Notes: a model not told the origin generated them from the letters alone. Counted from the first letter of the stretch, positions 1,265 through 57,569 are shown. The stretch: 64,000 bases of DNA from Oculina patagonica (GCF_052425735.1 NC_135761.1:33728001-33792000); one strand, 5' to 3'. Made by a program: numbers and translations.

Positions 1265-2043
1265 AACAGAGGCGCACAGAGCCAAAGAAAAAGACAAGCA
1301 AGAAGATAGTGGAGACGAAAAAACAAAGAGATTACCGGGGTATTAAGCTATTCAGCCTGTTGGCTGCCATTTAATTGTTTAAACGAAACTATCTTTTTTT
1401 ACTTTTTAGGAAGAAGTGGTAAAATAATTTGTTGAATGCTTAAATTGAAAACGGCCAAAAAAAAAAACCATCTTACACTTTAACCAACCGTCTACCTAAT
1501 GATGACTATCTTGTGTAATTAAAATTTACCTCCATTTCTGACCATTAAACACAGGATCCACTTTTAGTTTGGCAGAAACTAAGCTGCAACGACATTAATC
1601 AGAGAAAGATAGCAACATCACCTTCAATCTTGTGAGAAATATCTAAACAGCAGAAATAAACAACAAGAAAAAAACAGCAAAAACTGTTGCCTTGTCTTTT
1701 TGTTTCCTGCACTCTACTGCCTAAAACGGCCTATCAGCACTTCCAGCTACCATGACTTCCTTTTTTTAAACTACTGCTTTTATAACACCTAAACACCTAT
1801 TACACATGCTGCAAGGAGAGCTCTACAAAAACTAAGCAAAAAAAAAAACAGCACAAACTAAATGCTTTGAAAGGTTATTTTATTTTTATTACTGCCGGTC
1901 CTACTTGATGAAATGTCTCACTTTCAGTTTTATCTTAAAGAGATGCCAGTTTATGAAACATCATTGTCGGTACCAAGAGCACGAGAATATTGTCCAAATC
2001 CCAACGAGCACATGGACTTATTCCCTGATCCTACACTTGGACC

Positions 2044-2290
2044 TTGTGGAGTGAGTGGCATCCTCTACGACTTTGAGGTGTACACTGGAAAAACAACCAA
2101 GGCACAAGCAAATCCAGAATTACTTATGGGCGACAATGATGTCTTTCATTAAACACAATCACTGACAGAATGTGAATCACAAGGTTTTCTTTGATAATTT
2201 CTTCTCTTCAATGGCTATCACGAACTATTTGAAAAAATATGCTTTGGAGGCTGTTGCAACCATCCGCAAGGGCCGTTTGAAGGGGGTAGA
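2044..2290 (+). pseudogene. piggyBac (PGBD-type) transposase catalytic-core fragment
   Basis: CGVSGILYDFEVYTGK...NVNHKVFFDNFFSS...ATIRKGRLKG motifs with a frameshift; second copy at 23420-23650. Confidence 0.85.
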
Positions 2291-3649
2291 CAACCATTTC
2301 CGACTTAAAATAATTAGGAATGTTTTTGTTGTAAATAATAACTTATTTTAGCATTTTATTGTAAATAATATATTTTAGCATCCTTATTATTTTAAACTGA
2401 GGGCCCCAAGGTTATCAGTAACTTAATTAAATAAAGTCTAGAACAGTATGGAACAGTTCAGCGAATCAGGGATAAGGTTTTTACGTCAAACCTTCAAACA
2501 GATGTGGGACAACACCTTCGGACATCTTCCTTGTGGAATGTCAATCTTTCTAGTTTTCCTAGTTTTCAATCTTTCTGTCAATATGTCTCAAAACATCCCA
2601 TGAAATTCATGATCTTTCCCAGTTAGCCAATACCACTTTGGTTAAGCCTGGAAGACATCTCTGGAATCTCTGGTCCGTCTCTGCCCTCCATCGCTTGCCG
2701 TTGTTTGTGTAAAACTCTGAAAAATGAAAGAAAAAAAAAAAAAACGATGGCAATTCAAAAAAAAACTACAAGGAAATGGCGTCGGGTGCAAGTTAGTAAT
2801 CAACTTAACTATTGAAACTAGTTAAGGAAAAGGAATGGCTTCGGTACGTCACAGGACAATTTCAATTGCGTTTAAGAAAAGTTTACAAAGAAGAATTGCT
2901 TATATTGTAATGAAGAAGAAGAGGTTTATGAAGAACAGCAAGTCAGCTAGAAGGGTGGGAAAGAAATAGCTGGAGCACCATGACAACTTACAGATAGTTA
3001 ACTGATATCTGAATTATTTCTGATGAAACGGTGATGAGAATTAATTCCTATATTTTTAAGCGGGGGATGATGAAAAACGTACTTGCTGATTTATTTTTTC
3101 CATGTGACAAGTCACACTACATACTTCATGCCGACGAGAGAGAACTGCTAAGGCACCTTAGCAGTGAGCCCGTTGATGAAATCGATTCAAGACTTAATAT
3201 TTGTTTCACTGGGATGAAGAAAAAAATACAAATGCTATGTGAAGGACATTACAGGAAAGACGACAATGTACTATGTGATTACAAATACTCAGGTGGCAAA
3301 TGAAAAGACGACACACAAAATGGCGGATTAAAAGCTAGTGTGCAGCCGCTGAGCAATTTTGCATTGCCATTGAGTGACATTTAGTTTAACCATGCAGTCA
3401 ATTAAAAGATGACATATTTTCAATTTAAAAACAATGGGAATCCTACTTTTTCTCAACGAAGAAAAGCTAAGTACTGCCTTATTTGAATTGCACCACAGCA
3501 CTGTGCTGCGCGCTGTGATGTCCTTCTTTCATCTACATCCTAAATAGTGTCATTTTCAGTATTTACATGTTGGAAGAAGACAAAAATAAAAAAGAAAAAA
3601 AAGAAAGTAAACAAGGATCAAGAAGTACGTTAAAACTGTGTGTGTTTTT

Positions 3650-4279
3650 TGAGGAGAGGTTACTATAGCATGGGAATCTCTGAGGATGAGTTTAAAACAG
3701 AAGTCACTAGATGGAAGCATAAATGGAGTGGCATGGATCCAAATGTGACGCCGCATACTTTGGTTGAGACTCTTGACCATGCAAACTCCCAATTTTATCC
3801 CAGTGAATATGTTGCTCTCGTAACATTATTAACTTATCCTGTGACAAGCACTGCCGAAAGTAGCTTCAGAGTATGAAAAGACTTAAATCTCCTTCGCGAA
3901 GTACGATGACGGACAAAAGATTAAGTTCCATAGCAATCCTAAAAATCCATAAACACAAGAACGTGGATATTGACAGTGTAGTAATGGAGTTTGCCTGTCT
4001 AAAGGCTTGACACCTCGCAATTTGCTCCTGACCTGTGTCCGTTGTTTTTGTTTTTCCTTTTGTAACACTGTAGCTTATGGAAAACACTAGAGAAAAGGTT
4101 AAAATAAACTGTCTTTCTCCTGCATTTTACTCCAAAATTGAAGTGAAATTTTTTCATTGTGTGATTACAGATTAGAAAATGTGAAGAAATGTGTGTTTTA
4201 TTGAAAATGCCCGCAGAAAAACCAGGAGATGGCATTTCCGAGAACCTAAATTTCAAAATTACGCTATGCCCCTGATAGG
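3650..4279 (+). mobile_element. 3' part of a deleted hAT element (C-terminal dimerisation domain + right TIR)
   Basis: LLTYPVTSTAESSF..MKRLKS..RSTMTDKRLSSIAIL.IHK; right end acgctatgcccctg followed by ATAGG. Confidence 0.85.
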
Positions 4280-4609
4280 TTGAACCCTGCCCTTTAAAAA
4301 CCACTTTAATAAGCCCTGCTTAATTAGCTCTTGCATGCACATGTCTAAATCAACTTCCTGGAAATTTATGCTGTTCAGAAATAATGAACTGTCTCAAATA
4401 CCTCCCCAACAAGTATACAATAGTTCATATATTGTTTTTTATCTTGTTTCTGTTATTTTTCAATCAACTCAATGCAGCTTAAAATTACTTTTTTTCGACA
4501 GGTTGAGACGGGTCAGGCAGATTGTAGTGTTGAGCTGGTAGCCAACTTCCCTTAAAGATACATTTATTAATGTACATCCACACATTTACATACATACAGA
4601 CAGACAGAC

Positions 4610-4766
4610 GTAGAACTTCAAATGTTAGCGACGGTCCCCTGCTTGATAGGTACTTTGTCTTCTTGAAAGATGAATATCAAACAGTTACAAAAGTCCGGCG
4701 ATACTTTGCAGCAACCTGCATTGGTTTGCAGCAGAAAGGGCAGGGTTATTGGTACCCATCTAGTAA
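4610..4766 (+). pseudogene. Exon fragment of an unassigned protein family (paralog A)
   Basis: TSNVSDGPLLDRYFVFLKDEYQ..KVRRYFAATCIGLQQKGQGYW aligns with the 7600-7790 and 25040-25270 translations. Confidence 0.55.
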
Positions 4767-5148
4767 GGTACTTGCAAGATTAATTTGTTTTAAAATGTCT
4801 CACCATGCCTTGATTTTAGAGTAAGAAATGGTGTAAAAAATGCTACACAGGAAATGTGATTGTGCTAGCATGTACTCTGTTTCATAGTTCCATATCCAAA
4901 AGAAAAAAGTGTTGCAGAATGAGCAGCAACATTATCTATTTTTGGACACCAAATTCCAACCTTTTCAATGTGACCGCTAGAGATTTCAATGAAAGAACCT
5001 GGGCATCAGTTAATTAGAGGAGGGTCTGAGATATTCCAAATTGAAGATTAATGCTAAACCCTTTGTTCCATGTGCTTGATGTCGAAGCGCTGCAAAGAAT
5101 TTCGAATTTTTCTCACCAAACACATCTTTAAAACCCCGCACACACTGA

Positions 5149-5605
5149 ATGGAAAGCTCTGAAGAAGAAGATTTTTCTGATGATGATATTGTCGATATTT
5201 TTGGTGAAAGCGAAGACGAAGATGATTTTGGTGGGTTTAACTTTACCCTTCCTGACAAACTGGAAACTGATGAAGGAGGAGCGAAGACGCGCGGATTTTA
5301 CGAACAGAATCCTCGCAAGGTATTTAGCCGTGACAATGTTGGTCCAACAATCGATGAACTACCTAGTGAGAAGAGACCTGTTGATATTTTTCAACTCTTT
5401 ATCAGCGATGAACATTGGGAAAAAAATCGCTTGATGGACGAATGAATGGTTTCAAGTTACAGAACCAAGCAAACACAAAGCACCCTACGCACCGATCACC
5501 GACATTGCTGAATTGAAAGCGTGCACTGGTGTCATACTTGCAATGAACCAAAACATTGATATGAGCATTATCGGTACTTTCGCCAAGACGAGTCAAAATG
5601 GCTTC
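5149..5605 (+). pseudogene. piggyBac (PGBD4-like) transposase N-terminal fragment
   Basis: Acidic start MESSEEEDFSDDD, then GPT..P....PVDIFQLFISDE.W....WTN...AELKA..G...AM; second copy at 31197-31645. Confidence 0.75.
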
Positions 5606-5719
5606 TTATTTACAATACTAAGTACGTATTTTGTTCATGTGCATCATAATCCCCAGAATGCTACAGTCTCAAATACACCATGAAAAACACATAGCTACAG
5701 CTGGTACACAATTTCTTGA

Positions 5720-6800
5720 TCTTGACAAAGAAACGCAACAATTGTTTGCAGAATATTTAAGTAAAAGAAATTTTATTGAACGGGGTCCAAACTATTGAAA
5801 ACACGGTCCTATCTGCTCACCATCTGTTCACAAGGGAGCATCCCCTGGTAACAAACAACAAGCAGAAAATATGGAAAGCATGGCTGGGGAAGTAGTAAAA
5901 TGCATTGGTACCAAAATTTTCAATAAAGAAACCTTTTCAGTGCATCAGAGGAATGCCCTGCAAGAATCTGTGCGTGATGCAGCAGATTTATTTCTCTCTT
6001 TGAAGTATCCACTATTGCTTTTTATTTGTGATACACCATGTGGTATTGTAAGGCATATGGATTGCCGTGCACCTGATGTGGGGGAGATGCTGTGGGGAAA
6101 ATACAGTGGATGTTTGGAGGTTCCTGAAAGCCACAGATAACCATCACAGGTGTGAAACCTCTTAAAGAAACTAAAAATTACAAAAAAAAATCGTAATCAT
6201 CTTGGCTGCTGAATTTAATTTCACTTGTTACACTTTCCCTCATAATAATCCTCCCTTTCTAAATTGTTTTTTGTTATACTCTCCCACTCCCTCTTTAGGT
6301 TTCAATTATACCAGTAAAGAGATCAATTAATTGATTGTATTTTTTAGGGTATTAGTGTCCCACAAAGTGTACTTCCAGAGTACCTTGCTAGTTCAGTAGC
6401 TCCTGATTGCCGTTTAAACGAAGACAAGCCTCTAATGCATTCTTTATCTGGAGATTGCAGAAGATACATACTTGGTGATAGATTTCATTCTGCTAGCAAT
6501 TTACATAAATCAAAACTATGTGCATTTCATGACATAAATCTACGTTTGCAAGCTAATAGCCTGAAGACAAGCTATCAGGAGTGTGAGAATAATCGGAAAA
6601 ACATTTGCAAGTTACGAGGTGCATGTGTTCAAGGTTTTGGGGTCCACTTTCTCTACAATTACCTCATGGACTATTATCAAAATGAACAGATTGTACACAG
6701 AGAGGTTGCTTTACTAAAAAGGAATGCTCAAGGCAACTGTGATATCGTGAGAGATGAATTTATGCGTTTTGTTTTTAAACAAGCGGAATCCAAGAAGTAA
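5720..6800 (+). pseudogene. KDZ/CxC-type (HMGXB3-like) transposase fragment with intron
   Basis: QESVRDAADLFLSLKYP..FICDTPCG..RH, then after a GT-AG intron (~6150-6347) YILGDRFH...C.FH...TSYQECEN; further copies at 21630-21930 and 31760-32720. Confidence 0.65.
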
Positions 6801-7331
6801 ATTCAGCATTGAGGGTTTTCCTTTTGTTTCATTAGCATTAATGTAATAATGTTTTCCTACAACTAAATATTTGTGCAAATTTTGGCCAAAAATTGAGATT
6901 TTGGTTTTTGTTTCCTATTGTGTATTCTTCATAGCCAACATTTTTTGTCATCTTTCTTTGACATTTATTGCCGGCAATTTATGGCTGCCGAGAAAAACAT
7001 CTTTCTCCCTTGAATAACAATAAGGGCAGAAAAGAATAAAAGGATAGAGTATTTAAATATGATTCGATGTTGTTGCATTAGTTTTTGAGTGGATAGGTCC
7101 TTCCTCTATCTTGCTTTCCTTTTAATTCCTTTTTCGGGGGAGAGACCCTTTATCCCAATTCTCACAATTTACTATTTTCCCTTATTCCACACGTTACTGT
7201 TAGGTTTATACACTCACAAATCAAAATGAGTTTTACTAAATGTGTAACTTCTCGGCCTGATCTGTTTTCATTTGAATGTTGCAGACCCATTTTTTTTGCA
7301 GTGCTTGTTTTAGATGTTAGATCCGTGCTGA

Positions 7332-7790
7332 TGTCTCATTTTTCCTTCTCAGTTGTCACAGGACGAGGATGTCCTTTTTTTCATTGTTGGTGATGGGGGA
7401 CATACTTCGAAGAAAAAAAAGTTGAACGCTTCTTTTACTTGAAGATAGTCGGGGAAATCACTGAGGGAGGCTTCTGGGTCTGCTCCTTTGGTACCAGAGT
7501 TCTAGGAAGGCTGGTGGAAAGGTACTGTATTACATCACAAATTCTTTTGGAAGTTTTCGTTTACTGCTTTCGTACAACTTTTTTAATTTTTATTCTTAGG
7601 AGAATTGTCTTACATCCCAGTGCATTCAACTCCAAGTCGATTTTTTTTGCAGAAAACTCAGAAAAGCTTTGGTGCCGGTACCTTCAACTTAAGAGAAGGT
7701 GAACATTTGGAGAAATACCATGCATTCCTCAAATAGGAGTATTACCAAAGCTCAATTAGGCGATATTATGCTCTGTCGTGCATAGAAAAG
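7332..7790 (+). pseudogene. Two exons of an unassigned protein family (paralog B)
   Basis: ag|LSQDEDVLFFIVGDGG...KIVGEITEGGFWVCSFGTRVLGRLVER|gt, then ag|RIVLHPSAFNSK...TFNLREGEHLE.YHAFLK.EYYQSSIRRYYAL; copies at 22503-22986, 33289-33550, 34493-34670. Confidence 0.55.
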
Positions 7791-8667
7791 CTTCTGGTAC
7801 AAAGTTTGGCCTGTAAAAAGTGTTTATGGTGAGCATTTTGAGCGTGAAAGTTGCCATTACGGTATGCTAAACTTCAAGGTTTTATGACGAAACAAGCCAC
7901 GTTTATACCCAGTTAGATCATGTTTCAGCTGCTCGTGTTCACGGTTAGATAAAAGTGACGGTAGTATGAAAGATTGGGTGAATACCATAATTACGACCTG
8001 CATTTTACAGGAAATTATTAGTACAAAATCTTGCTATTATTGAAAGGTGCTCCTGACCAATCCATCTCAAGCTTAATAAAAAAATGTAAAGCAACATTCG
8101 ATGCACTCTTTTTGATGAAGTACATAAAAGTTATATCAAACCGGATGGCGAGCATCTGACAATAATATTGAACTTACAGTTTGTGTATAATTTATGACAA
8201 GAATGAGAGATTCATTTTTCTACTTTTAAAACAACAAAACTATTGGTTTACTTCCAAGGTGTAGAACAAAATATTTTGGTTTAAAATTTTTTGAAATTAC
8301 TGAGGGGTGGGGAAAGGATAATTAACTCCCCCTGGAAGAGAAATCATGTATGGGGTGAGGGTGCAAAACAAAATAGCCATCAGGGGCGTAGCCAGCCTAT
8401 AGGCCCGTAGGCCCGGGCCTACAAATTTTTTCGCCCACTTGAGTTTTTATAATATGATTATAATAAATGTTGAAATGAAAAAAAAATTATGACACATTTT
8501 CAAGTTTGTAAATAAGAAAGAAGGAGCAAGAATAAATCGCGTTAAAGCACACACACTAGTGCTGTTTTGACGAAATTTTGATAGTCAGCGGTCTTCAAAA
8601 AAGCTATTAAACCATACGTTCAGCGGTTACCGTCTACAAGGCAGCGAACAAATGCAGTTTCACAAAT

Positions 8668-8723
8668 ATGGCATCTAAAAGGCCCGGCAGTCGAAGCATT
8701 GATAGTTATTTCCAGAAAACAAG
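8668..8723 (+). CDS. Predicted leader exon 1 of the hAT element genes (MASKRPGSRSIDSYFQKT)
   Basis: ATG at 8668; hAT-like N-terminus (..SIDSYF.K); donor AG|GTATGT at 8724, phase 2. Confidence 0.7.
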
Positions 8724-9582
8724 GTATGTATTACCATTTAGTTTCTGTAGAAAGATAGATGAGAGCTGTTAGTACTAAACAAAGTTCGTGATATTAAAGT
8801 AACGACTGCAAATCCTAAGAGTTCTGTGTGCGGTCAAACATGAAACTGAAACAATTGGATCAACGGGCTATTAATTCAACTGCAATTTACAATATTCCAG
8901 ATTTGCCGTCTCTGCCTCAATGAGAATGTTCTGAAGTAACCTTGATACTTCTATTATAAAGCTTAATTAAATTATTTCTTTTAATATGTTCATTCAGTTA
9001 TCGTTTCGTTTCTAATGAACTGTCTATTCTGGCTACGATGGCCGAACACAGTTTGCGCGCGCTCTGTGGATTTTATCGCTGACGTAAGAAGCGCACGCGA
9101 GAGGGTTGAGAAAAACAACCGTGGAGCCGAAACAGTAATCACTTTATTTTTTCCTCGTTAAGGTTCCAGATGGATTGAAAAGAGCTTAAAATGACACAGT
9201 ATGTTCCGTGTCAAAACTTTTGTTACAACAGTATGTCAAAAAAGTTCAGGACGCAAAAAAACTCGGCCATTTTGGAGTCTGACTGTTGCCTTGAACTGTC
9301 CACGAGAACCCAGTTAAATGCAGCGCCATCTGGGACTATTAAAGTGCTTCGGTGGGATTTCACACAAATGCGCCGATTTTTGACAACCAGCCATTATCAG
9401 ATTTATAAAAAATTGGCAAAGACAACACTTCAGGAGACAATCAAGAGGCATTTTGCAACAAAAGAATGGAAATCTAATAGAGGGATTTTTTATGCTCTGC
9501 TGGGACATGTTAAAAAAAATTAAAATTCCCTCTTTGGAAACCCTATTTCTTTATGACATATTTGATTTAATTTTCAAAACAG

Positions 9583-9635
9583 CACTGCCACAAGTCAAAC
9601 CGATGGCGAAGATCCAAAACGGAAACGTTTGACAG
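9583..9635 (+). CDS. Predicted leader exon 2 (STATSQTDGEDPKRKRLT; NLS-like PKRKR)
   Basis: Acceptor ttttcaaaacAG at 9581-82, donor CAG|GTATAC at 9636; phase 2 in and phase 1 out, in frame with exon 1. Confidence 0.65.
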
Positions 9636-9906
9636 GTATACTATCTATTGGCCGCCAGGTTTAAATTTTTTAATACCACAGCCATGTTGTTATTTTAAAT
9701 AACTGAAATACTTTTTCTCGAGCTGTTTTTTTCCTTAAACAGCCAGAAAAACTAAAAGACATTGCAATCGTAATTTTATCTTATACAAATAACGAAATAG
9801 TGAAGCTAAAGACATTGAACAAGTTTGAAGATAAGTTAAGAATAAAATGCTGCCACATATGAACCGTGGAAAATGTAAAGTACTTTTTTTCATTTTTTCA
9901 TTGAAG

Positions 9907-10706
9907 AATCAGATGTGACCAGCAGTGATAGTGTAGAGTCTGTGGACCCAGACAAAAGCTTGAAACATGGATCATCAGGTGCCTCGCCCTTTCACATCCT
10001 TGATCTTCCTGAGGAGATATTGCTTACTATTTTTAAATACCTTCCATTGAGAGAAGCTAAGCAAACATATCTAGAGTTTGTAATATTTCAAGAGATTGGT
10101 GAACAGTGGAACAATGTGGAAATCATTTGGATTTTTGGACGATTTTGTTGTATTAAGTACGACAAAAAGTTTTTGATACCATATTTGATCATTCTCATCA
10201 GTTTCAGGAGTTGTATTTTAATGGCGACTTTGAAGCATTACTATCCCAAGTACCACTTGATTATTGTACTCAAAACTATCTGCATGCTGTAACTTGAAAG
10301 TCTTAGATTTAACTACAAATAGGAGTGTGCGTGAAATTCATTTGTTGTAAGTATGCCCAACCTAGAAAGTCTATTTCTTGAATGGTGTACACAGCTGATT
10401 CCAGATTCAGTCGTAGCTCTCTTATCGAAAGAACATCTTTGTCCCAAATTGAAGCAATTAAGCATGCGGAGGTGCGAGCAGTTTTTGGAAACAGAAATCA
10501 TGACCATTGTTATTTCACACAAAAAGCTTGAACGACTGGATATAAGTCACACAAGGGTGTTTAATGTTCAGTGCACTCTCAATATGATTAGTTCACTTCC
10601 TCGCCTCAAAGAGTTTGTGCTTTCTCCAGATTTAGACGAAAATAGTGAGGAGGAGTGGGAGCGTTTTCAAGCAAAATTTCCAATTCTTCGCTTTGAGTTA
10701 ATGTAG
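9907..10706 (+). CDS. F-box/leucine-rich-repeat (FBXL/AMN1-like) protein carried by the hAT element; frameshifted in this sequence
   Basis: F-box ILDLPEEILLTIFKYLP...SRVC..FKRLV..MWK (across frameshifts); LRRs MPNLESLFLEWCTQL, CPKLKQLSMRRCEQF, KLERLDISHT, LPRLKEF; stop at 10706. Confidence 0.85.
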
Positions 10707-10765
10707 TGCTTGGGGAAAAACGTTTTGCACGAACTGTTGAAATCCTGGAGAAAAGTTGTTGCTAA

Positions 10766-10771
10766 AATAAA
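10766..10771 (+). terminator. Polyadenylation signal of the F-box/LRR terminal exon
   Basis: AATAAA 60 nt after the F-box stop and 50 nt before the transposase acceptor. Confidence 0.5.
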
Positions 10772-10822
10772 TGAAAGTTGACTGTTAACTTAATTTTAAA
10801 CTTTCATTTCCCCTGCTTTCAG

Positions 10823-12949: not shown

Positions 12950-13284
12950 CTATTAGCTAGATTACTTTAGTGATAGGTTGACTTGTAACAGTGTATCGTT
13001 GGAGGAAGTCACTTTTAGTTGGTATTGAGTTCTATAGCTCAAACAAACAACAAAGAAACAATAAAATCATTTTTGAGGGTCTCTGCATAACAAACCTTCC
13101 GGCGAAGCATTTTACTGGGTCCCCTTAAACGCGGCCTTTATAATTTAGAGATCAGGCCTACAACAAGTTGAAAACCTGGCTACGCCCCTGGCCATCAATC
13201 AGTGTAAGGTCATGTATTTCTCTTACCACACATTAAGGACTTATTAAGACGAGATTTTTTTGAACTTCGAGCAACGCGCGGCCA

Positions 13285-18319: not shown

Positions 18320-18372
18320 CCATCACAGTCTTATTCAAACGTTTAAAGATCCTTCAACTTAATTTAAGAAAA

Positions 18373-25612: not shown

Positions 25613-25639
25613 AATGGTTGATAATTATACCAAGGAAGA

Positions 25640-42214: not shown

Positions 42215-42332
42215 GCATTTCACGGCAGGAAACCACTGGTGCCAGGTATTTATGAAGAGAAATGGTCTGTTGCTTCGACAGAAGACAACTCTTGCTCAGC
42301 AGCTTCCAGAAGATTACGAAGAAAAGATCGTC
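42215..42332 (+). pseudogene. pogo/Tigger CENP-B-type HTH fragment
   Basis: FTAGNHWCQVFMKRNGLLLRQKTTLAQQLPEDYEEKI. Confidence 0.8.
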
Positions 42333-42723: not shown

Positions 42724-42879
42724 TGAAGTCCGCAGCATATCTGATTTTCCTTGCGCAGGGGCGGCAAACTTTATCTGATTATCCTGGATCTTGGACCAGC
42801 TTCACACCAACAATGAACAAAGTGTCCGCCAACACACAACCAGGGCATTCTTTCCTTCCCGAAGGCAAAAACAGGTTCT

Positions 42880-46349: not shown

Positions 46350-46777
46350 GCCAAGATTCTGTGTGTGAGGTTGCCCGATAACAACATTGTGTTCAAGGAT
46401 TCCATTTGTTTCCTCCAGATGCCTCTTTTCTTCTTTCCCAAAGCGTTTGGTCTCACACCGAGCAGCCAAAAAGGTCCTTTCCTCATTTGTTTAACACAGT
46501 CGAGGAACAATCGTACGTGGGACCAATGCCTGCTTGCGACTTCTACGATCCCAAAGGTATGTCAGCCTTTCACAAGGCCGAATTTGAAAAGTGGTACACC
46601 GATCTTGTGGCCGAGGACTACCAGTTCAACTTTAACTGGGAACTGTTGGCTTATTGCCAATCTGACGTGAAATTGTTGCCAGAAGGATGTGAAGTGTTCT
46701 GGGAAGAATTCCAAGCAGTGGCAGGATTCGACCCCATGGAGCAGTGTCTCAATATCACAGCTGCCTGTAACCGTTAA
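46350..46777 (+). pseudogene. Protein-primed family B DNA polymerase fragment (Polinton/Maverick)
   Basis: FKDSICFLQMPL..FPKAFGL...FPHLFN...YVGPMP...F.KWY...FNF..ELLAYCQSDVKLL.EGC..F. Confidence 0.9.
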
Positions 46778-47189: not shown

Positions 47190-47302
47190 TTGGGCGTAAA
47201 TACCCGCCTATAAGACACACCCCAATTTTGGCATAAACTTCCCGTTGAAAAACAGATTTTTCTCGAAAAAGCTGTGCGCCTTATAACTGAATAACTACGG
47301 TA
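47190..47302. mobile_element. pogo/Tc1-type MITE right end
   Basis: tataagacacacc ... tgcgccttata ... tacggTA terminus. Confidence 0.45.
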
Positions 47303-47636
47303 TTTCAAAGAAAGCAAACCAAGAAAGTCGAAAGCAAGTCTTGACAACTTGTTTGGAACAAAGAGGCCAAGACTTCAAAGTGCAGAAGAAATGCACAAAT
47401 TCATAAAATCAAAGATCACAGAGCTTTGAACTTTTCTCTGGCAGAATATCAAGTGGTTTCCAATTCATATTCTGTGAGAGTTAAGCCCAAGGAAGATCAT
47501 GAGGAAGATGATCCCGTGCCTCACACACCTTGGCTAGATTTGTTAGTCTGCAAATGTAATTGCTCAAATTTTCCCACTACCTGGAAAAGTAATTGTGGAG
47601 ATGTCCAATGGAAATAATGTCCTGTCAGTCTAGCAC

Positions 47637-48967
47637 TAGCCTGCGTAGCTGGCGGGAGTTGAGTGCGAGCGCTTGCTTCGAGCGGGTGAAGCCTGCGTGT
47701 GTGAGCGGCGAAGCCGCGATCCGCGAGCGGCGAGCAAGTGAAATTCCCGCCTGCCACATTACTAGGGGGTTTTGCTTGCCGCCCACTTTTATCGCCCTTG
47801 ATGATCTAATTATATAAGCCAATCAGAAAGTGAGGTGTAATACAAAACTCCAGTTTTTTTACGCGCGAAACGGCGGTAAATGTTATGACCACAAACATTC
47901 CTTTGATGGCACATGGAGATTTCCAGTAACGATAAGAACGGTACGCCAAAAAAAACTGCAAAACCCGAAACCAAGAGAAGGAGTTGTTAGGGATATATGC
48001 AGACTGTGTTGTACCAATTTCAAGCAAAAGTTTGGCGATTTTAAGAAATCCGTGTCCGTTTCCACTGTAAATCTATTCAAGCCGTCGAAAGGAGAAGGAG
48101 TCGAAAATGGTGACACATTAGCCAATCTCTGCTCGCGAATTGGTTTTAACGTCGAGAAGAGCACAACTTTGTCAGAACGTGTCTGCCAAAGTGTGCAAGA
48201 AAGATACCAAACACTGTGCAGCTATATGAATTTATTGCGTCGAGCCTGAATCGAAACCAAGAACACTCTCAATCGAAGAGCTTGCAGTTATGTTCGAGTG
48301 AGGAATCACCGCCTAGATTCAAGCGTCTCCTTCCAAGCTCCATCGCCTCTCCCCAACGAAGCCCACAGCCCAAGAAAGGCCACAAAAGAAACACTGGCGT
48401 TAAAAAAACCTTTAACTTCGCAGAAAAAGTATCGTCAACCGAGGAAAATGACGAGCGGCGTTCGAATGCAGAAAGCTTAAGGTGTCATAATCTCAACCTG
48501 GATGATTTGGTTGGAAATCAGACAAGCCAAGTGAAAGTTGTAATAGTGGCTCCTAGTGGCCGGGTAGAAAATCATAGTTCCTTTGATGACAAAAGTAAAT
48601 CAATGATCACGAATCTGTGTAGAAAGAACTGGCAACCTGTCGCCAATGCGTGTTTTCAGCACCTGCATTTGCGCGATGAATTCACAGAACCACTGCGAAA
48701 AACAGTCAACGCAGAGTTTAAAGAATATTGTAAAAATTCAACTGATTCTGTGTTGAAGAAGTCAAGCCCGGAAGATTCTCGTACACAAAGCTGAAGTTTG
48801 GTGCCCCGTATGGATGGCTTGCTTGAAAGGCGCTTGCAATGTACAAGAGTCATCAGATGAAGACATCAAGGCTACAAATTCCCTAGCCTTGTCGACGGCA
48901 GTAGCCGCTCGCTGTAGAAATCCGACAATGTCAGCTGTTTCCTATCGCATCTCAACAATTCTCTTTG
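47637..48967 (+). mobile_element. 5' fragment of an Academ-like transposon
   Basis: Starts TAGCCTGCGTAGCTGGC with a GC-rich subterminal region; ORFs CRLCCTNF...ERVCQ.C and ...ARCRNPTMSAVSYRISTIL; absent from the paralogous site at 55279-55300. Confidence 0.55.
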
Positions 48968-49479
48968 GTAAATAAAGGTGATGGGCCTACAGGACTCCTA
49001 CGTTCGTGACATTTGTAACCTTTTCCGTTTTATGTTGAGTTCGGTCTTCTGAGTTCTGACTTCTTTCTGAGGGTACTGTTATTATTTGGAGGCATTATGT
49101 ATTGTAGAGCCGTAAGATTGTGGCCAAGGAAGTGTCTAGAGGTCATAAGCCCGCGCTGCGTGGTTTCCGTTTGTAGAGCTGAATGACGCCTCTAAATCTG
49201 TACTCTGCCACATGTTGTGCTAGTTTAGTTTGTTTTGGCTCAATTCTAATTGCAAGATAAGCTTTAAGCTATCAAAATGTTCGCTCTGGAAGGACAAGAT
49301 CTGAAATGTTCCGTGAAAATGTAAACTACTTGCATGCTGTTATTGATGACGGGCCCGGCATTTTAATCAATACTGTTGCAAGATGTATCATCTTATCACG
49401 GATTATCTTGGTCAGGCTTGGCCAGAGACTGTTTCAGCTTTGATATGAAAAAGAAAAATTCAAAAAACCCTATCCATTA

Positions 49480-50545
49480 GCACTGACTCAACTAATGGTG
49501 AACAACTTGGTGGAAAAACCCCAGTACATTAAAAGGAAGCAGCTTTCACAAGGACTGCTAAAAAACACTACGAAAGTGAAAACAGTTGCAGCTACTAAAG
49601 AAAGCCATGGAACTTAGAATGAGCCAGAAACCAGCAGCCCCACGTATAGGAATGCTGTGATATTGGAAGGCTACATAGACTCCTTGTGGTCGCAGATTAG
49701 TTATATTCCCAAAGAGAAATTAAGGAAAGCTGTTGTTGCCATCAGAAACAATGAAATTAAGAAAGAAGAGTTTGACTTTTATTGGATTTATGTATGTTCC
49801 AGATTTGAATGATGGCTGTACCACCCGCGTGTACTGATTTCCAAAGATGGCCATTTTCTCCAACAGATGCCCAATTACAAATAAAACTTCAACTCCTTAA
49901 CGCTAACTTCAAAGCTCTTTGCTTTAAACATTGGCCAGACTATGTAAGATTGGAGAAGTACATTCCCAGTCACTTCTCTGTGTTTGGAAAAAACTCAGAA
50001 TGTGAGATTTTCTGCCTGAAAACTTTTCATTATTTGCTGCAGTCTCCTTCCCTGAACAAGTGTTTGTTTAAACTTTCGTTCACAAAAAACTTGCCGAGTT
50101 CTGAACGGCAAGGGCTTTTTTTTAAAAAAAACTTCCGTAACTACCTATCCTTTAGGGCCAATTATATTTTGCATAAGAGGTAGCTTGACATCGTCAATAC
50201 AAGCAATTCACTGTAACACTCAATCACCACCATTTTAAATTGATTTTCACTGATTATAAGGTCTGTGGACATATTTTTACCCACTAAGCTTCACTGAGTT
50301 GATCAGTTGCTAAGGTACGCCATGCACATGTGCATGCACATAAGCCTTCGTTAAAAATGACACCTCTGTGGAGGCAGAAAAAGATTTCAAAGTGCAAGAA
50401 AAAAATCCCTGCTGTGCAAGGGAAAAAATCAGCTGAGTCAAGTGAATTGGAGCTGGAAGTCACAGAAGGTTTGTCCTGGCAGCACATTGGACGGAAGAAC
50501 TGTACAAGAGTGGCGACCAAGAATCGGATTTGATAGTCCAGCAAA
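49480..50545 (+). repeat. Duplicated block (copy of ~55290-56505) with a HIRAN-like domain remnant
   Basis: High identity; LKGSS.H...EP...NAVI..G.I.......YIPK. Confidence 0.75.
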
Positions 50546-50757
50546 AGTAAAAAAAAAAAATTGAGTAAAGCGCTTTCTTTTAAAGAAAACTGAACCAACT
50601 TTAAATGTATAATTTATAGTATAGTATAGAATAGAGTATACTTGTATGTAGTAATTCAATGATGATAGAGTTTTAATTGTAAATATCATTTTATTTGTTA
50701 GGTTAGGGCTAGTTTGGTAAATGTAGAGCTACTCTGTAGATATGTCACCAATAAAAC

Positions 50758-50758
<1 letters not shown>

Positions 50759-50812
<54 letters not shown>
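50759..50812 (+). repeat. (ATT)n microsatellite, LINE-type tail
   Basis: 18 ATT units directly after AATAAAACC; similar tails at 26994-27028, 37845-37872 and 45616-45641. Confidence 0.85.
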
Positions 50813-50814
<2 letters not shown>

Positions 50815-53800
50815 AGGCCTGGTGTAAAAATCAATCTCACTGTCATATTTTTCATCACAGTTTGTTTGGCAGGGAACTGACGATGTAAGGGTAACACTAC
50901 TGGCGCTTCTCCCCCTTGCAAATAAAAATCAGCAGTACCACAAATTGATTATGTAAGTAAAAAGTCTTTGCACACTTTTTTGCATTTTTCAGCACTTAGA
51001 GCATCCTTTATTAAAAAGGTGACATATTTTCTATAAATTTATATACTTTTGAACAGGTTGTTAAACAACGTACCTAACACCTGCGCATGCTATCTGTGGA
51101 TAGCCGACAAAGACTCCAATGAGGGGAGAAAAGGTATGTATAATATAACTGTAATTAATAATTTGTTTTCTCAATTATTTTGGAGTCTGGATTCTTTTTG
51201 ACAGCTGTATGTGTTGTTTTGAAGATTCAGTATCAGTGAAATATGGAAATTAATTTCAAAGTGTAAACATGGTATTCAAATTCTATTTTGGTCAGACCAG
51301 TTTCTTAGAGTCATGCTGCATGGACGGCTTGTTGTAATTCTGTCTGTTTAAATATATCTGAGTGACTTATACCTATTATTCATTTCAGTGAAAGTGAAAT
51401 TCGGTGTTTAACATGATAACTGGACAGTGCTTGTGCTGGCTCCATCCCACAGCAGGTTAAAACCACAGTGTATCGAAATCTTGGATGGTCAGTATAGTGG
51501 ACGTAATTATTGAATGGATCTAGTCTAAAATAAAGTCAATAATTTACATGGGCACTTCTGTAATACTATGAGATGGGCACCTCTTAAAGATAAACAAAAG
51601 ACATCTTAAGCACTGTTAGCAAAAAAATACTTTTTGTTGACATAAAGTTAAGGAAGTCAGTGACTTTAAAAACCCACACAAAGTAATTTTGTGAGGTGAG
51701 TTGAAAACACTGGCATGCAGTCCACAAAATTCATACCAACCCCCAATCCATAGACTATGTATAGACTACAGACTACCCAAGAGACTTACCATATGAAACA
51801 AACACAATTATAATCACTTTTACAGTAAGACGGAGTTTCTTCTGCAGGGTTAGGATGTAAATTAAGTAAGAATTTTGAGTTTGATTTATTACTGGGATTT
51901 CCGGAATTGCAAGCAAGTTTGTTGCACTTTAGTTTGCTTGGGATATAAGTAATAATTATAATCAAGATTGCTCGCATTTTGTTACCGGTAGTTCATCTCC
52001 AGTTTGCTTGCAGAAAGCTCCACTCCGGTAATTAAGGGAATGAAATTTCATTTAGTATTTTGTAGAATATTTATTTAGTCTTATATTATTTTTTTTGGAA
52101 AAGTGAGAAAACAAGTACAAGGGTGAATTTAAACGTACAAACTACCACGCCAAGATAAATCATTTAAAAGTACTGTGATCATTTTAATTATTTCTAACAG
52201 AATCAAACTTTGAAGAGGGGAGTAGTGAAGTAGCATTGGCTACTGCAGCAGAGTTTTGTGCTGCCGTCAGTGATGAAAGGTAACTTGTTGGTTTTTAACT
52301 GTTAAAATTTTGTGTTGGTATTCACTATTGCCTTCTTTTTGATATAGTATGTAATTTAGAGGGTAATGTAAGTGATCTAAAATTTGTGGCATTCTGACTT
52401 GGTATATTATATGGTATTAAAATCAATAAGTATGCAGCCTGAGGTGGTGCAAGCCCATAAGTTTGGAAAAACTTTGAGTGATCCTTAATTATTGTTTCTT
52501 GAGATGCGCAATACCTTGCCTGCAATAAAAAACAAACAAACTGATGATGCCAATGAAAACAAATAAATTGTGCAAAAATTGTTGATTGAAATGTACCAAG
52601 GCTTTAAAGCATTGCAGGAAGTTGTAAATTAACTGACTGCTATGAACTATTTAACTTTTACAGAGAAAAATTAGAGGCATGGAGGTCAGAAAAAGAAGTG
52701 CAAGATAGGGAGTGAGGTAAATAAATAAAGCATAGCATAGCATAAAGCTTGGCATAGCATTATATTGGGGTTCCCCTGTAAAGGATGATAGCAACTTGTA
52801 TAATACAGTAACGCATTGCTGGCCAATATGGGGTGCCTCATCCACAGCTTAACACAATGGCTCCAAGAGTAGGACTTAAAAAAAGACGTGATTTAGATTT
52901 AATAAGATTGTGGGATCCGTCGCACGAGAGAGTATTACTTGGTGGTGCAGAAAATTTTATCTCAAAATAATGCTGACATCAATTACCACAATAGAATGAA
53001 GAAATTTCTGGAAATATGCCTTGAGAAAAGATGAAAATAAAGTCAAATGGCGGCTAGTGCTCATTTCAAAGAATACAAAAGCAAGAAAACCCAAAGCAAG
53101 TCTTAACAACTTGTTTAAAACAAAAAGGCGAAGACTGAGTGCAGAAGAAATGCACAAATTCTTGAAATCAAAAAATAACAAAAGAAGAGCTTCGTTTTAA
53201 CTTTTCTGTAGCAGAAACTTGGGCAGAAATTTCCTTACAGATACAAAGACACATCCTCACATCTGACAATAAAAAAAACGAAGCTCTTGTGGTTGACCTT
53301 AATCTTGGTCTACTCTTGGAAAGTGGCCTACAGATTTATCAAAAGGAAAAATCCTCAAGCATGTGACAGGAACTTTGGATCAGTGGAACACAAAGAATAC
53401 ACAGATTTCAGCTTATCATGCAAGACGATTAAGAGCTTTAGTCAAAGCTTTTCAATCATTTCCAAAACTTGCAAAACTCAGATTGACAACAACAGAAGTT
53501 TGCAGCAGACTTGCTGTTATTCTCAAAGGTCTTGAGATTCCTGAATATAGAGACTTTTGGTCACAGACCAATTAACAGCAAAAATGGCTGCAAGAGTAAG
53601 ACTTAAAAGAAAGACATGCAATTTAGATTTAGTAAGTGAAAAGTTTCGAATTGATATGCAACATGCCTGCTGCCATTTTAAAACATATCCATTATGCAGG
53701 TAAATGTTATAACAACTTTAACATGTCTTTTCCAATCTAAAGAGGGGTAAGACTTTAAACAATATTACCATTTAAAAAAAAAAAAACACCAAACAAGTAC

Positions 53801-54719
53801 ACAACACAACACTGATGGATAGCACAGAATCCATAGCAATGTCAATTGGGGGAAAATCATGTCTATGTAGGAGGGAGAGTTCTATACATTCACAGCATGC
53901 AATCTGTACCATTTTTATGGCAAATGTTTGACAACAACTTGGTCAACAACTGTGTCTACTGCAGCAAAACAGGACATCAGCAAATCAGTGTACCACCAAG
54001 TGCAGGCTTGGATTTGCTGTCCAGACATTTTGAACGTTGCTGTCAATTTACTCCTAACATAAAATAATGAAGACTGTAAAATGAACATTCCACTATGCCA
54101 CATAGCCAAATATCACAACTGCAACAGGTTAATGCTGGTGAAAAACTGTTTTGTTGATGTTAATGTTTTAGTTTCATTTTTGTTTAATCGATCAAGCTTT
54201 GTAGATTGATGTCACCACTTCTTCTTTAGTTTCTTCACCACCTCTATCCTTCCAGGTACATGAAACAATGTTCATAACTAAAACTAAAACAAAAGTACAC
54301 GGCATTTGTCATGGGGACACGGGCAGACGGGAGTTTCAGTCTAAGCTAAGATAAAGACAGCAAACAATACTCAGTGACTGCTTTCCCAAGGTCATCTCTA
54401 CAATTCTGAATGAAGACATCTTTTTCTTTGACCCTCTTGTAAAGAAATATAAGAATCAAGCAATTAATTTATGCAGAGACATAATTTTGAGGCATCATTG
54501 TGATTATATTCACCAAGCATTCAATAGCATTTTTGAAGTTGCAATAAACCATCAAAACACCATTTCAACATTTCAAATTTTTTCACAGTCAGGGTAGGAT
54601 AAAAGCACATTTCACCAATTTCTTGCAGACTTAATGAAAAGAATGAAGACAGAAGTTGCCCTCAGACACGAGCAACATTTTGTTTAACTTGACGCTATTT
54701 CCATTTCAATAATTCGTAG

Positions 54720-54870
54720 GTGCCAATGCTCAAATTGTTCCCTTGAGCTAATTACCAAGCCAGACGAGTGCTAGTGTTGCACAGACATTGACAGGTGCAT
54801 TGAGCGAATGTACGAAGTGGAGAAAGAGGGCCAATGCATTACCGAGAATCCAGGCTATGCAGCAAATGAT
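54720..54870 (+). pseudogene. P2X7 C-terminal-like Cys-rich domain fragment (Kolobok accessory-protein type)
   Basis: CQCSNCSLE..TKPDEC*CCTDI......CITENPGY after an AG acceptor. Confidence 0.7.
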
Positions 54871-55278
54871 AGAACATTATCTGTTGTTGTGGAATATCAA
54901 GTGGTTTCCAATTCATATTCTGTGAGAGTTAAAACCAAGGAAGATCATGAGGAAGATGATCCCATGCCTCACACACCTTGGCTGGATTTGTTAGTCTGCA
55001 AATGTAATTGCTCAAATTTCCCCTACCTGGAAAAGTAATTGTGAAGATGTCTGAAAATAAAGACGTCCGGAAATAAATTCAGAGAGATTTAAGAATGTAT
55101 TTGTTAATAGCCTAATTTTTATATATAATATCAAGTTTTTAATTCTTCTTATATTTTTTATCGTTCTTAGATTTTAAATGTAATTTATGTAAATTAGATA
55201 CGTTATGTATTTTTTTATGTAACATAATATATGTATTTTTTTTGAGAACTATGAAGATGATGATTATAATTGGATATC

Positions 55279-55710
55279 CTGTCAGTCCAGCACTGACTCA
55301 AGTGATGAAAATGAATCAGAGGGGAGTGATGAGGAGCTCCATGAAGAACTTGGTGGAGAAACCCCACTCAGTGATGAAAGTGAGCAGTTTAAAGAGTACT
55401 TTGCATTAAAAGGAAGCAGCTACCACAAGGACTGATAAATAACATTACGAAAGTGTAAACAGTTCCAGCTAGAAAAGAAAGCCATGGAACTTAGGATGAG
55501 CCCGGAACCCAGCACCCCAGGGATAGGAAGAACCTAGCAACCCCAGAGATAGGAATGCTGTGATAGTGTAAGGCTACATAGACTCCTTGTGGTCGCAAAA
55601 TTAATATATTCCCAAAAAGAAATTAAGGAAAGCTGTTGTTGCCATCAGAAACAATGAAATTAAGAAAGTAGAGTTTAAGTTTATTGGATTTATGTATGTC
55701 CCAGATTTGA
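55279..55710 (+). pseudogene. Acidic stretch + HIRAN-like domain fragment
   Basis: SDENESEGSDEE...FALKGSSYH...EP..NPRDRNAVIV....YIPK. Confidence 0.55.
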
Positions 55711-57569
55711 ATGACTGACTGTACCACCCTCGTGTACAGATTTCCAAAGTTGGCCATTTTCTCCAACAGATGCCAATTACAAATAAAACTTCAACTACTA
55801 ACGCTAACTTCAAAGCTCTTGGCTTTAAACAGTGGCCAGACTATGTAAGATTGGAGAAGTACATTCTCAGTCACTTCTCTGTGTTTGGAAAAACTCAGAA
55901 TGTTTAAAAGTATCCATTATTGCAATAAGACTTAATTAAGGTGAGATTTTCTGCCTGAGAACTTTTCATCATTTGCTGCAGTCTCCTTCCCTGAAAAAGT
56001 ATTGGTTTAAACTTTCCTTCACAAAAAACCTGCCGAGTTCTGAACCAAAAAGGCTTTTTTTAAAAAAAACTTTTGTAACTACTTATCCTTTAGGGCCTGT
56101 TATATTTTGCATAAGAGGCAGTCTAACATTGTCAATACAAGCAATTCCCCGTAACACTCAATCAACACCATTTTGAATTTGATTTTCACTGATCATAAGG
56201 TCTGTGGACATGTGTTTACCCACTAAGCCCCACTGAGTATTGTTTTGTTGATCAGTTGCTAAGGTACGTCATAATGCATGCATCACATCTGGTGACACAT
56301 AAGCCTTTATTCAAAATGGCACCTCTGAGGAAGCAGAAAAAGAATTCAAAGTTCAAGAAAAAAAATCCCTGTTGTGTGAGAGAAAAAATCAGCTGAGTCG
56401 AGAGGAATTGGAGCGGGAAGTCACAGAAAGTTTGTCCTGGCAGCACATTGGACAGAAGAACTGTACAAGAGTGGCGATCAAGAATCAGATTTGATAGTCC
56501 AGGGAAATATTTGAGCAAAAAAAGTGTAGAAAAAGAAATTGTTTCTTGTAACTTGTCCGATTGTTTTTATGAAAAATCTGCTAGTTCTCTGGAGGGCAAC
56601 GCAGACAGCGATGACCCTTCTCACAGACATTGACATTGCTTTACACTTGTTCATTTTCATTTTTGTGCCAGTTAATTTTTCACTAGCTTTTCACACTTGT
56701 AAACATAACTTGATCGTACACAAACAGAACAGAGATAGCTCAGAGATTTTGTTATTACAGAGATATTTTTTTATGGTTTTAGGCATAGTCAGGAATTATA
56801 ATGCAAGTTCCATCTTAGTTTCCTTTTACTATTCAATTTATGCAGTGTTCCCTTTCCTTCAATTTTAGCTGTATATTTGCTAACACACATTTATGTAATT
56901 TTAGTTCTCACCGCATGCTTTGATGATTGTAATTTAGTCATAAATCATTGAAGTTACATTGTTGGAGTGTGTGTTGATCACTGCGAACCCCAAGGACTCG
57001 ATTTGGGACCAAGACAACTCTGAATACTATCAGAGTTCTGAGGAAGCTATCAAATGTAATGTAATGTGGTTGCCATGGAAGGATTGTGAATTTCAGAGGC
57101 TCTGATATGCCATGGATATGCCAAGTTTTCAAGAACTCTTCGACAGTGCCTTGGAATTCCCTGCATATCCAAAAACCTGTATTATGAAGTTATTAAACTT
57201 GTTTACCCACATATCACTGACATTCTTAGTGAAATGGGTGAGGAGGAAAAAGAAAGGACGAGATACTAACAACTCCTTTGCAATTCTTCAACTTAAGGTG
57301 GTACATATGGCTAAAATGCGTCTAAAAAGAGCCCATTTTAAGATATTTTATTAACTTTGTTTAAATTCCTAAATTCACTATTGTATAGTAATTTTTACCG
57401 TAGAATCCAAATTTGAATTAAAATTTTTCGATTTCCGGTCATAAAGGTGTGAAAATTGACACCTTAAAATGTCACTCAAAATAATAATTACTTTATTTTC
57501 TCCATTTCTTTTCTTTGAATAGCTTCCTTCTTTGTACTATCAAATACCTGTATAAAAACAATTCTTATG

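What the first reader, a model, noticed from the sequence alone, without database searches (positions are those of the whole stretch)
1870..57000. ~55-kb library of co-oriented transposon fragments: candidate uni-strand piRNA cluster
Seen: about 18-20 unrelated TE-derived coding fragments (two piggyBac, three hAT, KDZ, P-like, RING, CUT, L1, CR1/L2, DUF7869-like, pogo, RecQ, Mutator-like, PolB, Academ, HIRAN, P2X7-C) are all on the + strand, mostly 100-500 bp and abutting without their own ends. I saw only small minus-strand remnants (Penelope core at 30339, LINE tail at ~44130). Random orientation is highly unlikely (order 2^-17). Established: flamenco-type clusters accumulate TE fragments antisense to one long transcript, and cnidarians have PIWI/piRNA pathways. 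Inference: this is a TE-memory locus transcribed from the minus strand, dominated by DNA-transposon and Polinton pieces.
Basis: partly seen in the sequence, partly recalled or inferred. Interest (0 to 1): 0.85.

Follow-up and report, generated by a model that had tools for sequence, protein, structure and literature searches.

The report
Same-strand transposon graveyard in a coral
A 55-kb stretch of an Oculina patagonica (stony coral) chromosome is packed with broken transposon genes, plus a few whole transposons, that almost all face the same way; this is the layout expected of a one-strand piRNA source locus, but part of it comes from local head-to-tail copying and no RNA evidence could be checked.

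Summary
The window is Oculina patagonica chromosome CM126638.1, 33,728,001-33,792,000. The strand bias is real. There are 19 ORFs of at least 120 aa on + against 3 on -, where chance predicts about 1-1.6 per strand. All 73 minus-strand ORFs of at least 70 aa gave no credible Pfam hit. Plus-strand ORFs hit hAT, piggyBac, pogo, DEAD/RecQ-like, CUT and F-box/LRR domains. True internal fragments exist: a 251-bp RecQ-like piece fused to a pogo piece, and the last ~200 aa of a KDZ-like protein.

A ~6-kb mosaic (1877-7791) recurs about five times head to tail in 21459-37354. All 56-58 DNA self-matches inside the block are direct. Some elements keep their own ends, notably a young, complete 4.8-kb hAT. 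After duplicates are collapsed, the bias persists (15 to 3). Adjacencies checked against other loci are unique to this locus, so it is not one dispersed giant element.

A minus-strand piRNA precursor locus is the best single reading (about 0.4) but is untested. Unistrand clusters are already known in sea anemones and corals. PolB/Polinton, Academ, HIRAN, P2X7-C and Penelope labels were not confirmed.

The parts
1871..57300 (+). The block: a mosaic of transposon pieces whose coding strands face +
   Evidence: ORF asymmetry is present in every 8-kb bin. The upstream 4.85 kb (L002) lacks it. CpG o/e is 0.62 in the block vs 0.90 at 57-64 kb.
1877..7791 (+). Reference copy of a ~6-kb mosaic unit holding piggyBac, hAT C-terminal and KDZ-like pieces
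   Evidence: Self-blastn; the repeat finder families D1-D20.
21459..37354 (+). Head-to-tail array of about four further rearranged or deleted passes through the unit (75-96% identity), including a 1.13-kb tandem pair at 33367-35614 (96.5%)
   Evidence: The same recombinant junction occurs twice.
1871..2348 (+). piggyBac transposase piece (unit); second copy at 23252-23655
   Evidence: DDE_Tnp_1_7, E 1.3e-4, on the second copy; 93% nt identity between copies.
3634..4037 (+). hAT C-terminal (dimerisation) piece of the unit; copies at 28261-28617 and 36039-36410
   Evidence: Dimer_Tnp_hAT at 2e-3 on two copies; 36-44% aa identity to the complete hAT.
5954..7279 (+). KDZ-like transposase 3' piece (last ~200 aa only); copies near 21459-22170 and 31994-32957
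   Evidence: tblastn of 700-860-aa relatives matches only their C-termini. One relative has a weak CxC4/KDZ hit. L003 shares only this part of the unit.
8381..13190 (+). Complete young hAT element: 15-bp perfect TIRs, GCCAT on both flanks, 110-aa ORF intact. The F-box/LRR cargo gene (9915-10703) and the transposase (10882-12946) are each broken at least once
   Evidence: It is 97.5% identical over its full length to L005/L006, which have other flanks and intact 265-aa and 723-aa ORFs.
18307..18744 (+). RING-H2-like ORF (weak)
   Evidence: PDB hits to RLIM/RNF38/Arkadia RING domains, E 0.017-0.08; no Pfam hit.
21121..21396 (+). Partial CUT DNA-binding domain next to the restart of the array
   Evidence: Pfam CUT, 6.3e-13, profile positions 7-52 of 79.
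28739..29641 (+). Third hAT lineage, C-terminal part, placed 120 bp after a unit hAT piece
   Evidence: Dimer_Tnp_hAT, 2e-5.
37988..39559 (+). LINE-like copy: 305-aa coiled-coil ORF1-type ORF, short endonuclease-like and ORF2-end-like stretches (by eye), and an A10 tail
   Evidence: Baculo_FP_2nd, 2e-4; translations; A-run at 39550. No PDB hit.
42189..42584 (+). A pogo (Tc5 HTH) piece fused directly to a 251-bp RecQ-like helicase piece
   Evidence: HTH_Tnp_Tc5 + DEAD in one ORF. Database relatives cover one half or the other but not both. Family homology continues past both ends of the RecQ piece.
42817..43535 (+). Unnamed transposase-like ORFs; a diverged relative lies at 57090-57266 (+)
   Evidence: 53% aa self-match; no Pfam or PDB hit.
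46350..46774 (+).
   Evidence: A resemblance by eye only; no Pfam or PDB support.
47302..56502 (+). Second direct duplication (47302-50541 vs 53063-56502, 78-93% identity). The first copy holds a broken member of an unnamed ~300-aa ORF family (47637-48791)
57293..59071 (.). TTAA-flanked 1.78-kb element with ~32-nt terminal inverted repeats, at the right edge of the block
   Evidence: the repeat finder pair I2.

Best explanation
The block is a long-lived transposon sink. Pieces of at least a dozen unrelated elements, mostly DNA transposons, have accumulated and been truncated. The region has also been enlarged by local head-to-tail duplication, and it still receives whole insertions. Nearly everything lies with its coding strand on +.

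The most likely cause of that orientation filter is that the block lies in a transcription unit read from the minus strand, whose RNA is antisense to the elements. That would make it a unistrand, flamenco-type piRNA precursor locus. In such a locus, insertions giving antisense RNA are kept and local duplication multiplies them.

What is shown: the mosaic, the co-orientation, the duplications and the uniqueness of the junctions. What is inferred: the transcription, its direction and processing into piRNAs.
For: Only the plus strand has an ORF excess (19 vs 1.0 expected; minus 3 vs 1.6). The excess persists after duplicates are collapsed (15 vs 3). The Pfam tally is 11 plus ORFs with TE or gene domains against 0 credible minus hits, with all ORFs of at least 70 aa scanned.

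Diverged paralogues from separate insertions are co-oriented: three hAT lineages and two unnamed transposase-like copies. Junctions are not shared with other loci, so the pieces arrived or were joined here. Young insertions with their own ends also face +: the hAT at 97.5% identity to other copies and the LINE-like copy with its A-tail.

The pieces are close to other genomic copies (93.6% nt for RecQ-like, 81-90% for KDZ-like). CpG o/e is 0.62 with TpG/CpA excess in the block, against 0.90 in the right flank. From general knowledge, this fits germline methylation, which in invertebrates tracks transcribed units.

Unistrand clusters predominate in cnidarians (PMC5731801, PMC5793845). Per-strand TE content predicts flam-like clusters in flies with a false-positive rate near 0.011 (PMC11400887).
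Against: No small-RNA or transcript data exist for this species in the searchable literature, and none could be mapped. About 21% of the window consists of duplicate copies whose orientation is inherited, so the number of independent events is about 12 rather than 18-20. With many windows scanned, chance is not excluded.

AATAAA and ATTAAA are not depleted on the minus strand (71 vs 62 and 46 vs 31). The public gene models seen in the first 17 kb are mostly on +. Predicted coral piRNA clusters were reported to have low TE density (PMC13343488). The left flank is as CpG-poor as the block, so the CpG signal does not mark the block specifically.
Confidence: 0.4

Rival explanations
1. Neutral transposon graveyard. 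Nested insertions and deletions in a gene-poor, possibly pericentromeric region, followed by repeated direct tandem duplication. The remaining co-orientation among about a dozen independent pieces is a chance extreme picked out by the scan.
For: All self-matches in the block are direct, with shared recombinant junctions and a 1.13-kb tandem pair. 13.4 kb is redundant. The window lies at 33.7 Mb of a 64.4-Mb chromosome. There is no minus-strand polyA-signal depletion.
Against: The bias persists in non-duplicated sequence (15 vs 3) and in every 8-kb bin. About 12 unrelated families are all on +, giving p near 5e-4. Separately inserted young elements are also on +.
Confidence: 0.3
2. The block lies in a long intron or lncRNA read from the minus strand. 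Sense-oriented insertions are purged because they disturb processing of that transcript, without the locus being a piRNA source.
For: From general knowledge, antisense bias of TEs inside transcription units is well known. CpG depletion extends into the left flank, as it would for a longer unit. One minus-strand gene model starts at about 15546.
Against: From general knowledge, intronic bias is usually modest and strongest for LINE/LTR elements, whereas most pieces here are DNA transposons. No minus-strand ORF of at least 70 aa has any domain hit. The other gene models seen are on +.
Confidence: 0.15
3. A composite mobile element such as a Helitron, or a Pack-type capture of fragments, or its tandem array. 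The fragments would be cargo picked up in one orientation.
For: Co-oriented short internal fragments of unrelated genes abut directly, and the mosaic unit is arrayed head to tail.
Against: No Rep/helicase or other carrier gene was found. The unit junction is an ordinary recombinant join with no terminal motif. The mosaic is not shared as a whole by L003, and the pogo|RecQ join is absent from 5.8 billion clustered proteins. No convincing terminal repeats bound the block.
Confidence: 0.05
4. Plus-strand expression: the ORFs are exons of real, TE-derived or chimeric plus-strand genes or one sense transcript.
For: Public gene models on + cover 5149-6800 and 8668-12949, and one ends at 2152.
Against: The model at 5149-6800 joins an acidic ORF to a KDZ tail while skipping a homologous coding block. 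Most ORFs are truncated internal pieces, and copies differ by stops and frame changes. No exact products are on record for three large ORFs.
Confidence: 0.1

Closest known systems
flamenco and flam-like unistrand piRNA clusters of Drosophila
   Same: Tens of kb or more, dense truncated TE pieces, near-uniform orientation, local duplications, and continued capture of new insertions.
   Different: Here the content is mostly DNA transposons (hAT, piggyBac, pogo, KDZ-like) rather than Gypsy-type LTR elements. Promoter, transcript and small RNAs are unknown. The host is a coral.
Unistrand piRNA clusters of Nematostella vectensis and Anemonia viridis (PMC5731801, PMC5793845)
   Same: The same phylum; most clusters there give piRNAs from one strand.
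   Different: Those clusters are defined by small-RNA mapping. TE orientation inside them was not described in the passages read. This locus is defined only by sequence layout.
proTRAC-predicted piRNA clusters of reef corals (PMC13343488)
   Same: Scleractinian hosts; LTR and DNA transposon families enriched.
   Different: Those clusters had lower-than-expected TE density, whereas this block is TE-dense.
Antisense TE bias inside long introns
   Same: An orientation filter imposed by a host transcript.
   Different: The bias there is usually partial. No spanning host gene was seen here.
Helitron or Pack-type arrays of captured gene fragments
   Same: Short co-oriented internal fragments of unrelated genes that abut, and tandem arrays.
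   Different: No carrier gene or termini were found, and the junctions are not found elsewhere.

Membership tests
Unistrand (flamenco-type) piRNA cluster | Dense 24-31-nt, 1U-biased small RNAs from one strand | not testable with these tools
   No small-RNA data are available, and no Oculina piRNA paper was found.
Unistrand (flamenco-type) piRNA cluster | One long precursor transcript from a promoter at one end | not testable with these tools
   No RNA data. PolyA hexamers are not depleted on the minus strand, which is uninformative at best.
Unistrand (flamenco-type) piRNA cluster | High density of truncated pieces from many TE families | tested here: met
   hAT x3 lineages, piggyBac, pogo, RecQ-like, KDZ-like and LINE-like pieces.
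Unistrand (flamenco-type) piRNA cluster | Strong common orientation of the TE pieces | tested here: met
   ORFs 19 vs 3, or 15 vs 3 after collapse; Pfam 11 vs 0; self-matches 427 vs 0. Whether this orientation is antisense to a transcript is unknown.
Unistrand (flamenco-type) piRNA cluster | Pieces similar enough to dispersed genomic copies to guide silencing | tested here: inconclusive
   93.6% (RecQ-like), 81-90% (KDZ-like) and 97.5% (hAT) nt identity to copies in other assemblies of unknown species relationship.
Single giant or composite mobile element (Helitron-like) | The same mosaic and junctions at other loci | tested here: not met
   L001, L003 and L004 share only single pieces. No protein spans the pogo|RecQ join. 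Sampling is limited because no whole-genome search was possible.
Single giant or composite mobile element (Helitron-like) | Carrier gene and defined termini | tested here: not met
   No Rep/helicase domain in any ORF of at least 70 aa. Only weak 36-nt, 72% inverted arms lie near the block ends. The unit junction is plain.
Local tandem or segmental duplication array | Direct repeats with shared junctions and graded identity | tested here: met
   56-58 direct and 0 inverted matches inside the block, 75-96% identity, with a recombinant junction duplicated. This explains about 13 kb, not the whole bias.
hAT superfamily (element 8381-13190) | Terminal inverted repeats, target duplication, and a transposase with the hAT dimerisation domain | tested here: met
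   15-bp perfect TIRs and a 5-bp flank repeat; DUF4371 and Dimer_Tnp_hAT; intact 723-aa transposase in L005/L006. That a 5-bp duplication fits a known hAT subgroup is from memory.
Polinton/Maverick | Protein-primed PolB plus integrase and capsid genes | tested here: not met
   The stretch 46350-46774 has no Pfam or PDB hit. No other Polinton gene was seen.

The most novel reading that the evidence does not exclude
A flamenco-style, orientation-filtered piRNA source locus in a stony coral. It would be built mainly from DNA-transposon fragments, would grow by head-to-tail duplication of a mosaic unit, and would still be trapping active elements such as the F-box-carrying hAT in the antisense-producing orientation.
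Probability: 0.3. Interest if true: 0.55.

Novelty: new member of a known kind. Interest (0 to 1): 0.35.

Why it matters
If small RNAs confirm it, this would be a clear TE-trap-type unistrand piRNA cluster in a scleractinian coral. Clusters predicted in corals so far looked TE-poor. It would show that the flamenco layout (co-oriented fragments, growth by duplication, capture of active elements) also serves against DNA transposons outside bilaterians. If they do not confirm it, the locus is a useful caution: direct tandem duplication inflates apparent strand bias in TE-rich regions.

Tried and rejected
- **Exact-product look-ups.** Three large window ORFs are not on record. Nine of ten further ORFs are not in the collection, so the right flank beyond 64 kb and most public gene models could not be fetched.
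- **Rfam, tRNA and tandem-repeat scans.** Nothing relevant.
- **Pfam on short ORFs.** It has little power: the 70-99-aa ORFs gave only chance-level hits on either strand.
- **PDB sequence searches.** The PolB-like, ~300-aa family, P-like, LINE ORF1-like and unnamed transposase-like ORFs gave nothing. The RING-like ORF gave only weak hits.
- **Helitron-like ends at the unit junction.** Rejected.
- **The 251-bp RecQ-like piece as a discrete mobile unit.** Rejected, because family members continue past both ends.
- **The F-box/LRR ORFs as a captured host fragment.** Rejected: they are normal cargo of this hAT family.
- **Minus-strand Penelope near 30339 and LINE tail near 44130.** Nothing recognisable in minus-strand ORFs there.
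- **PolyA-signal depletion on the minus strand.** Not seen.


Full report
**Origin**

A KDZ-like ORF of the window is 100% identical to part of hypothetical protein ACROYT_G014478 of Oculina patagonica. Its locus L002 (GCA_052425735.1, CM126638.1:33,723,149-33,744,800) matches window 1-16800 at 100%. The window is therefore CM126638.1:33,728,001-33,792,000, near the middle of a 64.4-Mb chromosome. It has no N and a GC content of about 37%.

**Is the strand bias real?**

Yes.
- Stop-to-stop ORFs of at least 120 aa number 19 on + and 3 on -. Those of at least 150 aa number 7 and 0.
- Shuffling within 1-kb blocks predicts 1.0 (+) and 1.6 (-) ORFs of at least 120 aa. The plus strand is far in excess and the minus strand is at background. 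The excess is seen in all eight 8-kb bins.
- I ran Pfam on every ORF of at least 70 aa on both strands (105 plus, 73 minus).
  - Plus-strand hits: DUF4371, Dimer_Tnp_hAT in four ORFs, DDE_Tnp_1_7, CUT (6e-13), DEAD with HTH_Tnp_Tc5, F-box, LRR_4 and Baculo_FP_2nd.
  - Minus-strand hits: one chance-level hit only.
- Pfam is weak on pieces this short, on both strands. The ORF statistics carry most of the weight.

**Which labels hold?**

| Status | Labels | Basis |
|---|---|---|
| Supported | hAT (three lineages), piggyBac, CUT, pogo | Pfam hits above |
| Supported | RecQ-like helicase | Relatives carry DEAD/helicase domains; one is named RecQ by its source |
| Supported weakly | KDZ | One long relative has a sub-threshold CxC4/KDZ hit |
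| Supported weakly | RING | PDB RING-H2 hits at E 0.017-0.08 |
| Supported weakly | LINE ORF1-type ORF | Baculo_FP_2nd at 2e-4, plus endonuclease-like and ORF2-end-like stretches by eye and an A10 tail |
| Not supported by any tool | PolB/Polinton, Academ, HIRAN, P2X7-C, P-like, Mutator-like, DUF7869, the two minus-strand remnants | |

**Are the pieces true fragments?**

Some are.
- The 251-bp RecQ-like piece (42334-42584) is 93.6% identical to a copy in another assembly (L001). Homology stops abruptly at both ends. Family members continue to match each other beyond both ends, so the window copy is an internal fragment.
- That piece is joined directly to a pogo piece within one ORF. No protein among 5.8 billion clusters spans the join.
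- Only the last ~200 aa of 700-860-aa KDZ-like relatives is present.

Others are whole elements.
- hAT 8381-13190 has perfect 15-bp inverted ends and GCCAT on both flanks.
- It is 97.5% identical over its full length to copies with different flanks (L005, L006). Those copies encode an intact 110-aa ORF, a 265-aa F-box/LRR protein and a 723-aa transposase.
- In the window copy the 110-aa ORF is intact. The F-box gene and the transposase are each broken at least once.
- The LINE-like copy keeps a 3' A-run.

- Self-blastn gives 58 matches covering 21 kb. All are direct and none is inverted.
- At relaxed settings there are 56 direct matches and one inverted match. The inverted one is a palindrome outside the block.
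- A ~6-kb mosaic (1877-7791: piggyBac piece, hAT C-terminal piece, KDZ-like piece and unnamed ORFs) recurs in 21459-37354. The recurrence forms about four further circularly permuted, partly deleted passes at 75-96% identity.
- This array includes a recombinant junction present twice and a 1.13-kb tandem pair at 96.5%.
- A second duplication links 47302-50541 with 53063-56502.
- All 427 protein-level self-matches are co-oriented.
The two piggyBac pieces are an example.

**Does the bias survive?**

Yes.
- Dropping the downstream copy of every duplicate (13.4 kb) leaves 15 vs 3 ORFs of at least 120 aa and 6 vs 0 of at least 150 aa.
- Counting only distinct, tool-supported or multi-copy families gives about 12 plus-strand events and no confirmed minus-strand event. 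The families counted are piggyBac, three hAT lineages, KDZ-like, CUT, LINE-like, pogo, RecQ-like, two diverged unnamed transposase-like copies, and the ~300-aa ORF family.
- That gives a two-sided p near 5e-4 before correction for the number of windows scanned (my inference).
- Adjacent pieces were not imported together. L001, L003 and L004 each share a single piece with the window.

**Edges and context**

- The 4.85 kb upstream of the window has no such ORFs.
- Beyond about 57.3 kb the asymmetry fades. A TTAA-flanked 1.78-kb element with inverted ends sits at 57293-59071.
- CpG o/e is 0.62 in the block with TpG/CpA excess, 0.66 in the left flank and 0.90 at 57-64 kb. It is 0.95 around the young hAT. 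This suggests old germline methylation of the block but does not single it out from its left flank.
- AATAAA and ATTAAA are not depleted on the minus strand.
- Public gene models seen in the first 17 kb are mostly plus-strand joins of TE ORFs.

**Interpretation**

The layout matches what defines flamenco-type clusters at the sequence level. In Drosophila, per-strand TE content alone predicts such clusters with about a 1% false-positive rate (PMC11400887). Cnidarians have mostly unistrand clusters: 402 of 457 in Nematostella (PMC5731801) and 61-68% in Anemonia (PMC5793845). Corals have 47-107 predicted clusters, reported as TE-poor (PMC13343488).

| Reading | Probability |
|---|---|
| Minus-strand piRNA precursor locus | ~0.4 |
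| Neutral graveyard inflated by tandem duplication plus chance | ~0.3 |
| Minus-strand intron or lncRNA filter without piRNAs | ~0.15 |
| Plus-strand expression | ~0.1 |
| Composite mobile element | ~0.05 |

The decisive evidence, strand-specific small RNAs and transcripts, is not available. No Oculina piRNA study was found.

**Verdict**

If true, it is a new member of a known kind.

Noticed in passing
window 8381-13190; L005 1988-6919; L006 1-4902: A young, multi-copy hAT family carries an F-box + LRR protein gene (265 aa in intact copies) and a 110-aa ORF upstream of its 723-aa transposase. A transposon-borne F-box protein is unusual cargo. The flanking repeat is 5 bp (GCCAT).
   Followed up: partly
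window 13285-13451 and 15341-15507: A 167-bp direct repeat, 100% identical, 2056 bp apart, just right of the hAT. It could be a very recent duplication, small-element ends, or an assembly effect.
   Followed up: no
window 57293-59071: A 1.78-kb element with ~32-nt terminal inverted repeats, flanked by TTAA on both sides. From memory, this is the piggyBac-type target. No recognisable coding domain.
   Followed up: partly
window 63469-63577: A near-perfect palindrome with 47-nt arms and a 4-nt spacer. It is the only inverted self-match in the whole window.
   Followed up: no
window 47637-48791; L004 9769-10767: A member of an unnamed ~300-aa ORF family with no Pfam or PDB match, present in many copies in coral assemblies (one cluster has 43 members). 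In L004 it lies beside NACHT/WD40 (NLR-like) genes.
   Followed up: partly
window 42189-42500: The pogo and RecQ-like pieces are joined in frame, giving one 104-aa chimeric ORF. The join is not seen in any database protein.
   Followed up: yes
window 61334-61407 and 63927-64000: A 74-bp direct repeat, 100% identical, outside the block. The second copy touches the window end.
   Followed up: no
L001 (ENA ERZ25067872, 20 kb): A tandem minus-strand array of BTB + TLD domain ORFs surrounds an isolated RecQ-like piece. This is an example of co-orientation arising from gene-family duplication.
   Followed up: no
window 50759-50812: A perfect (ATT)18 microsatellite.
   Followed up: no
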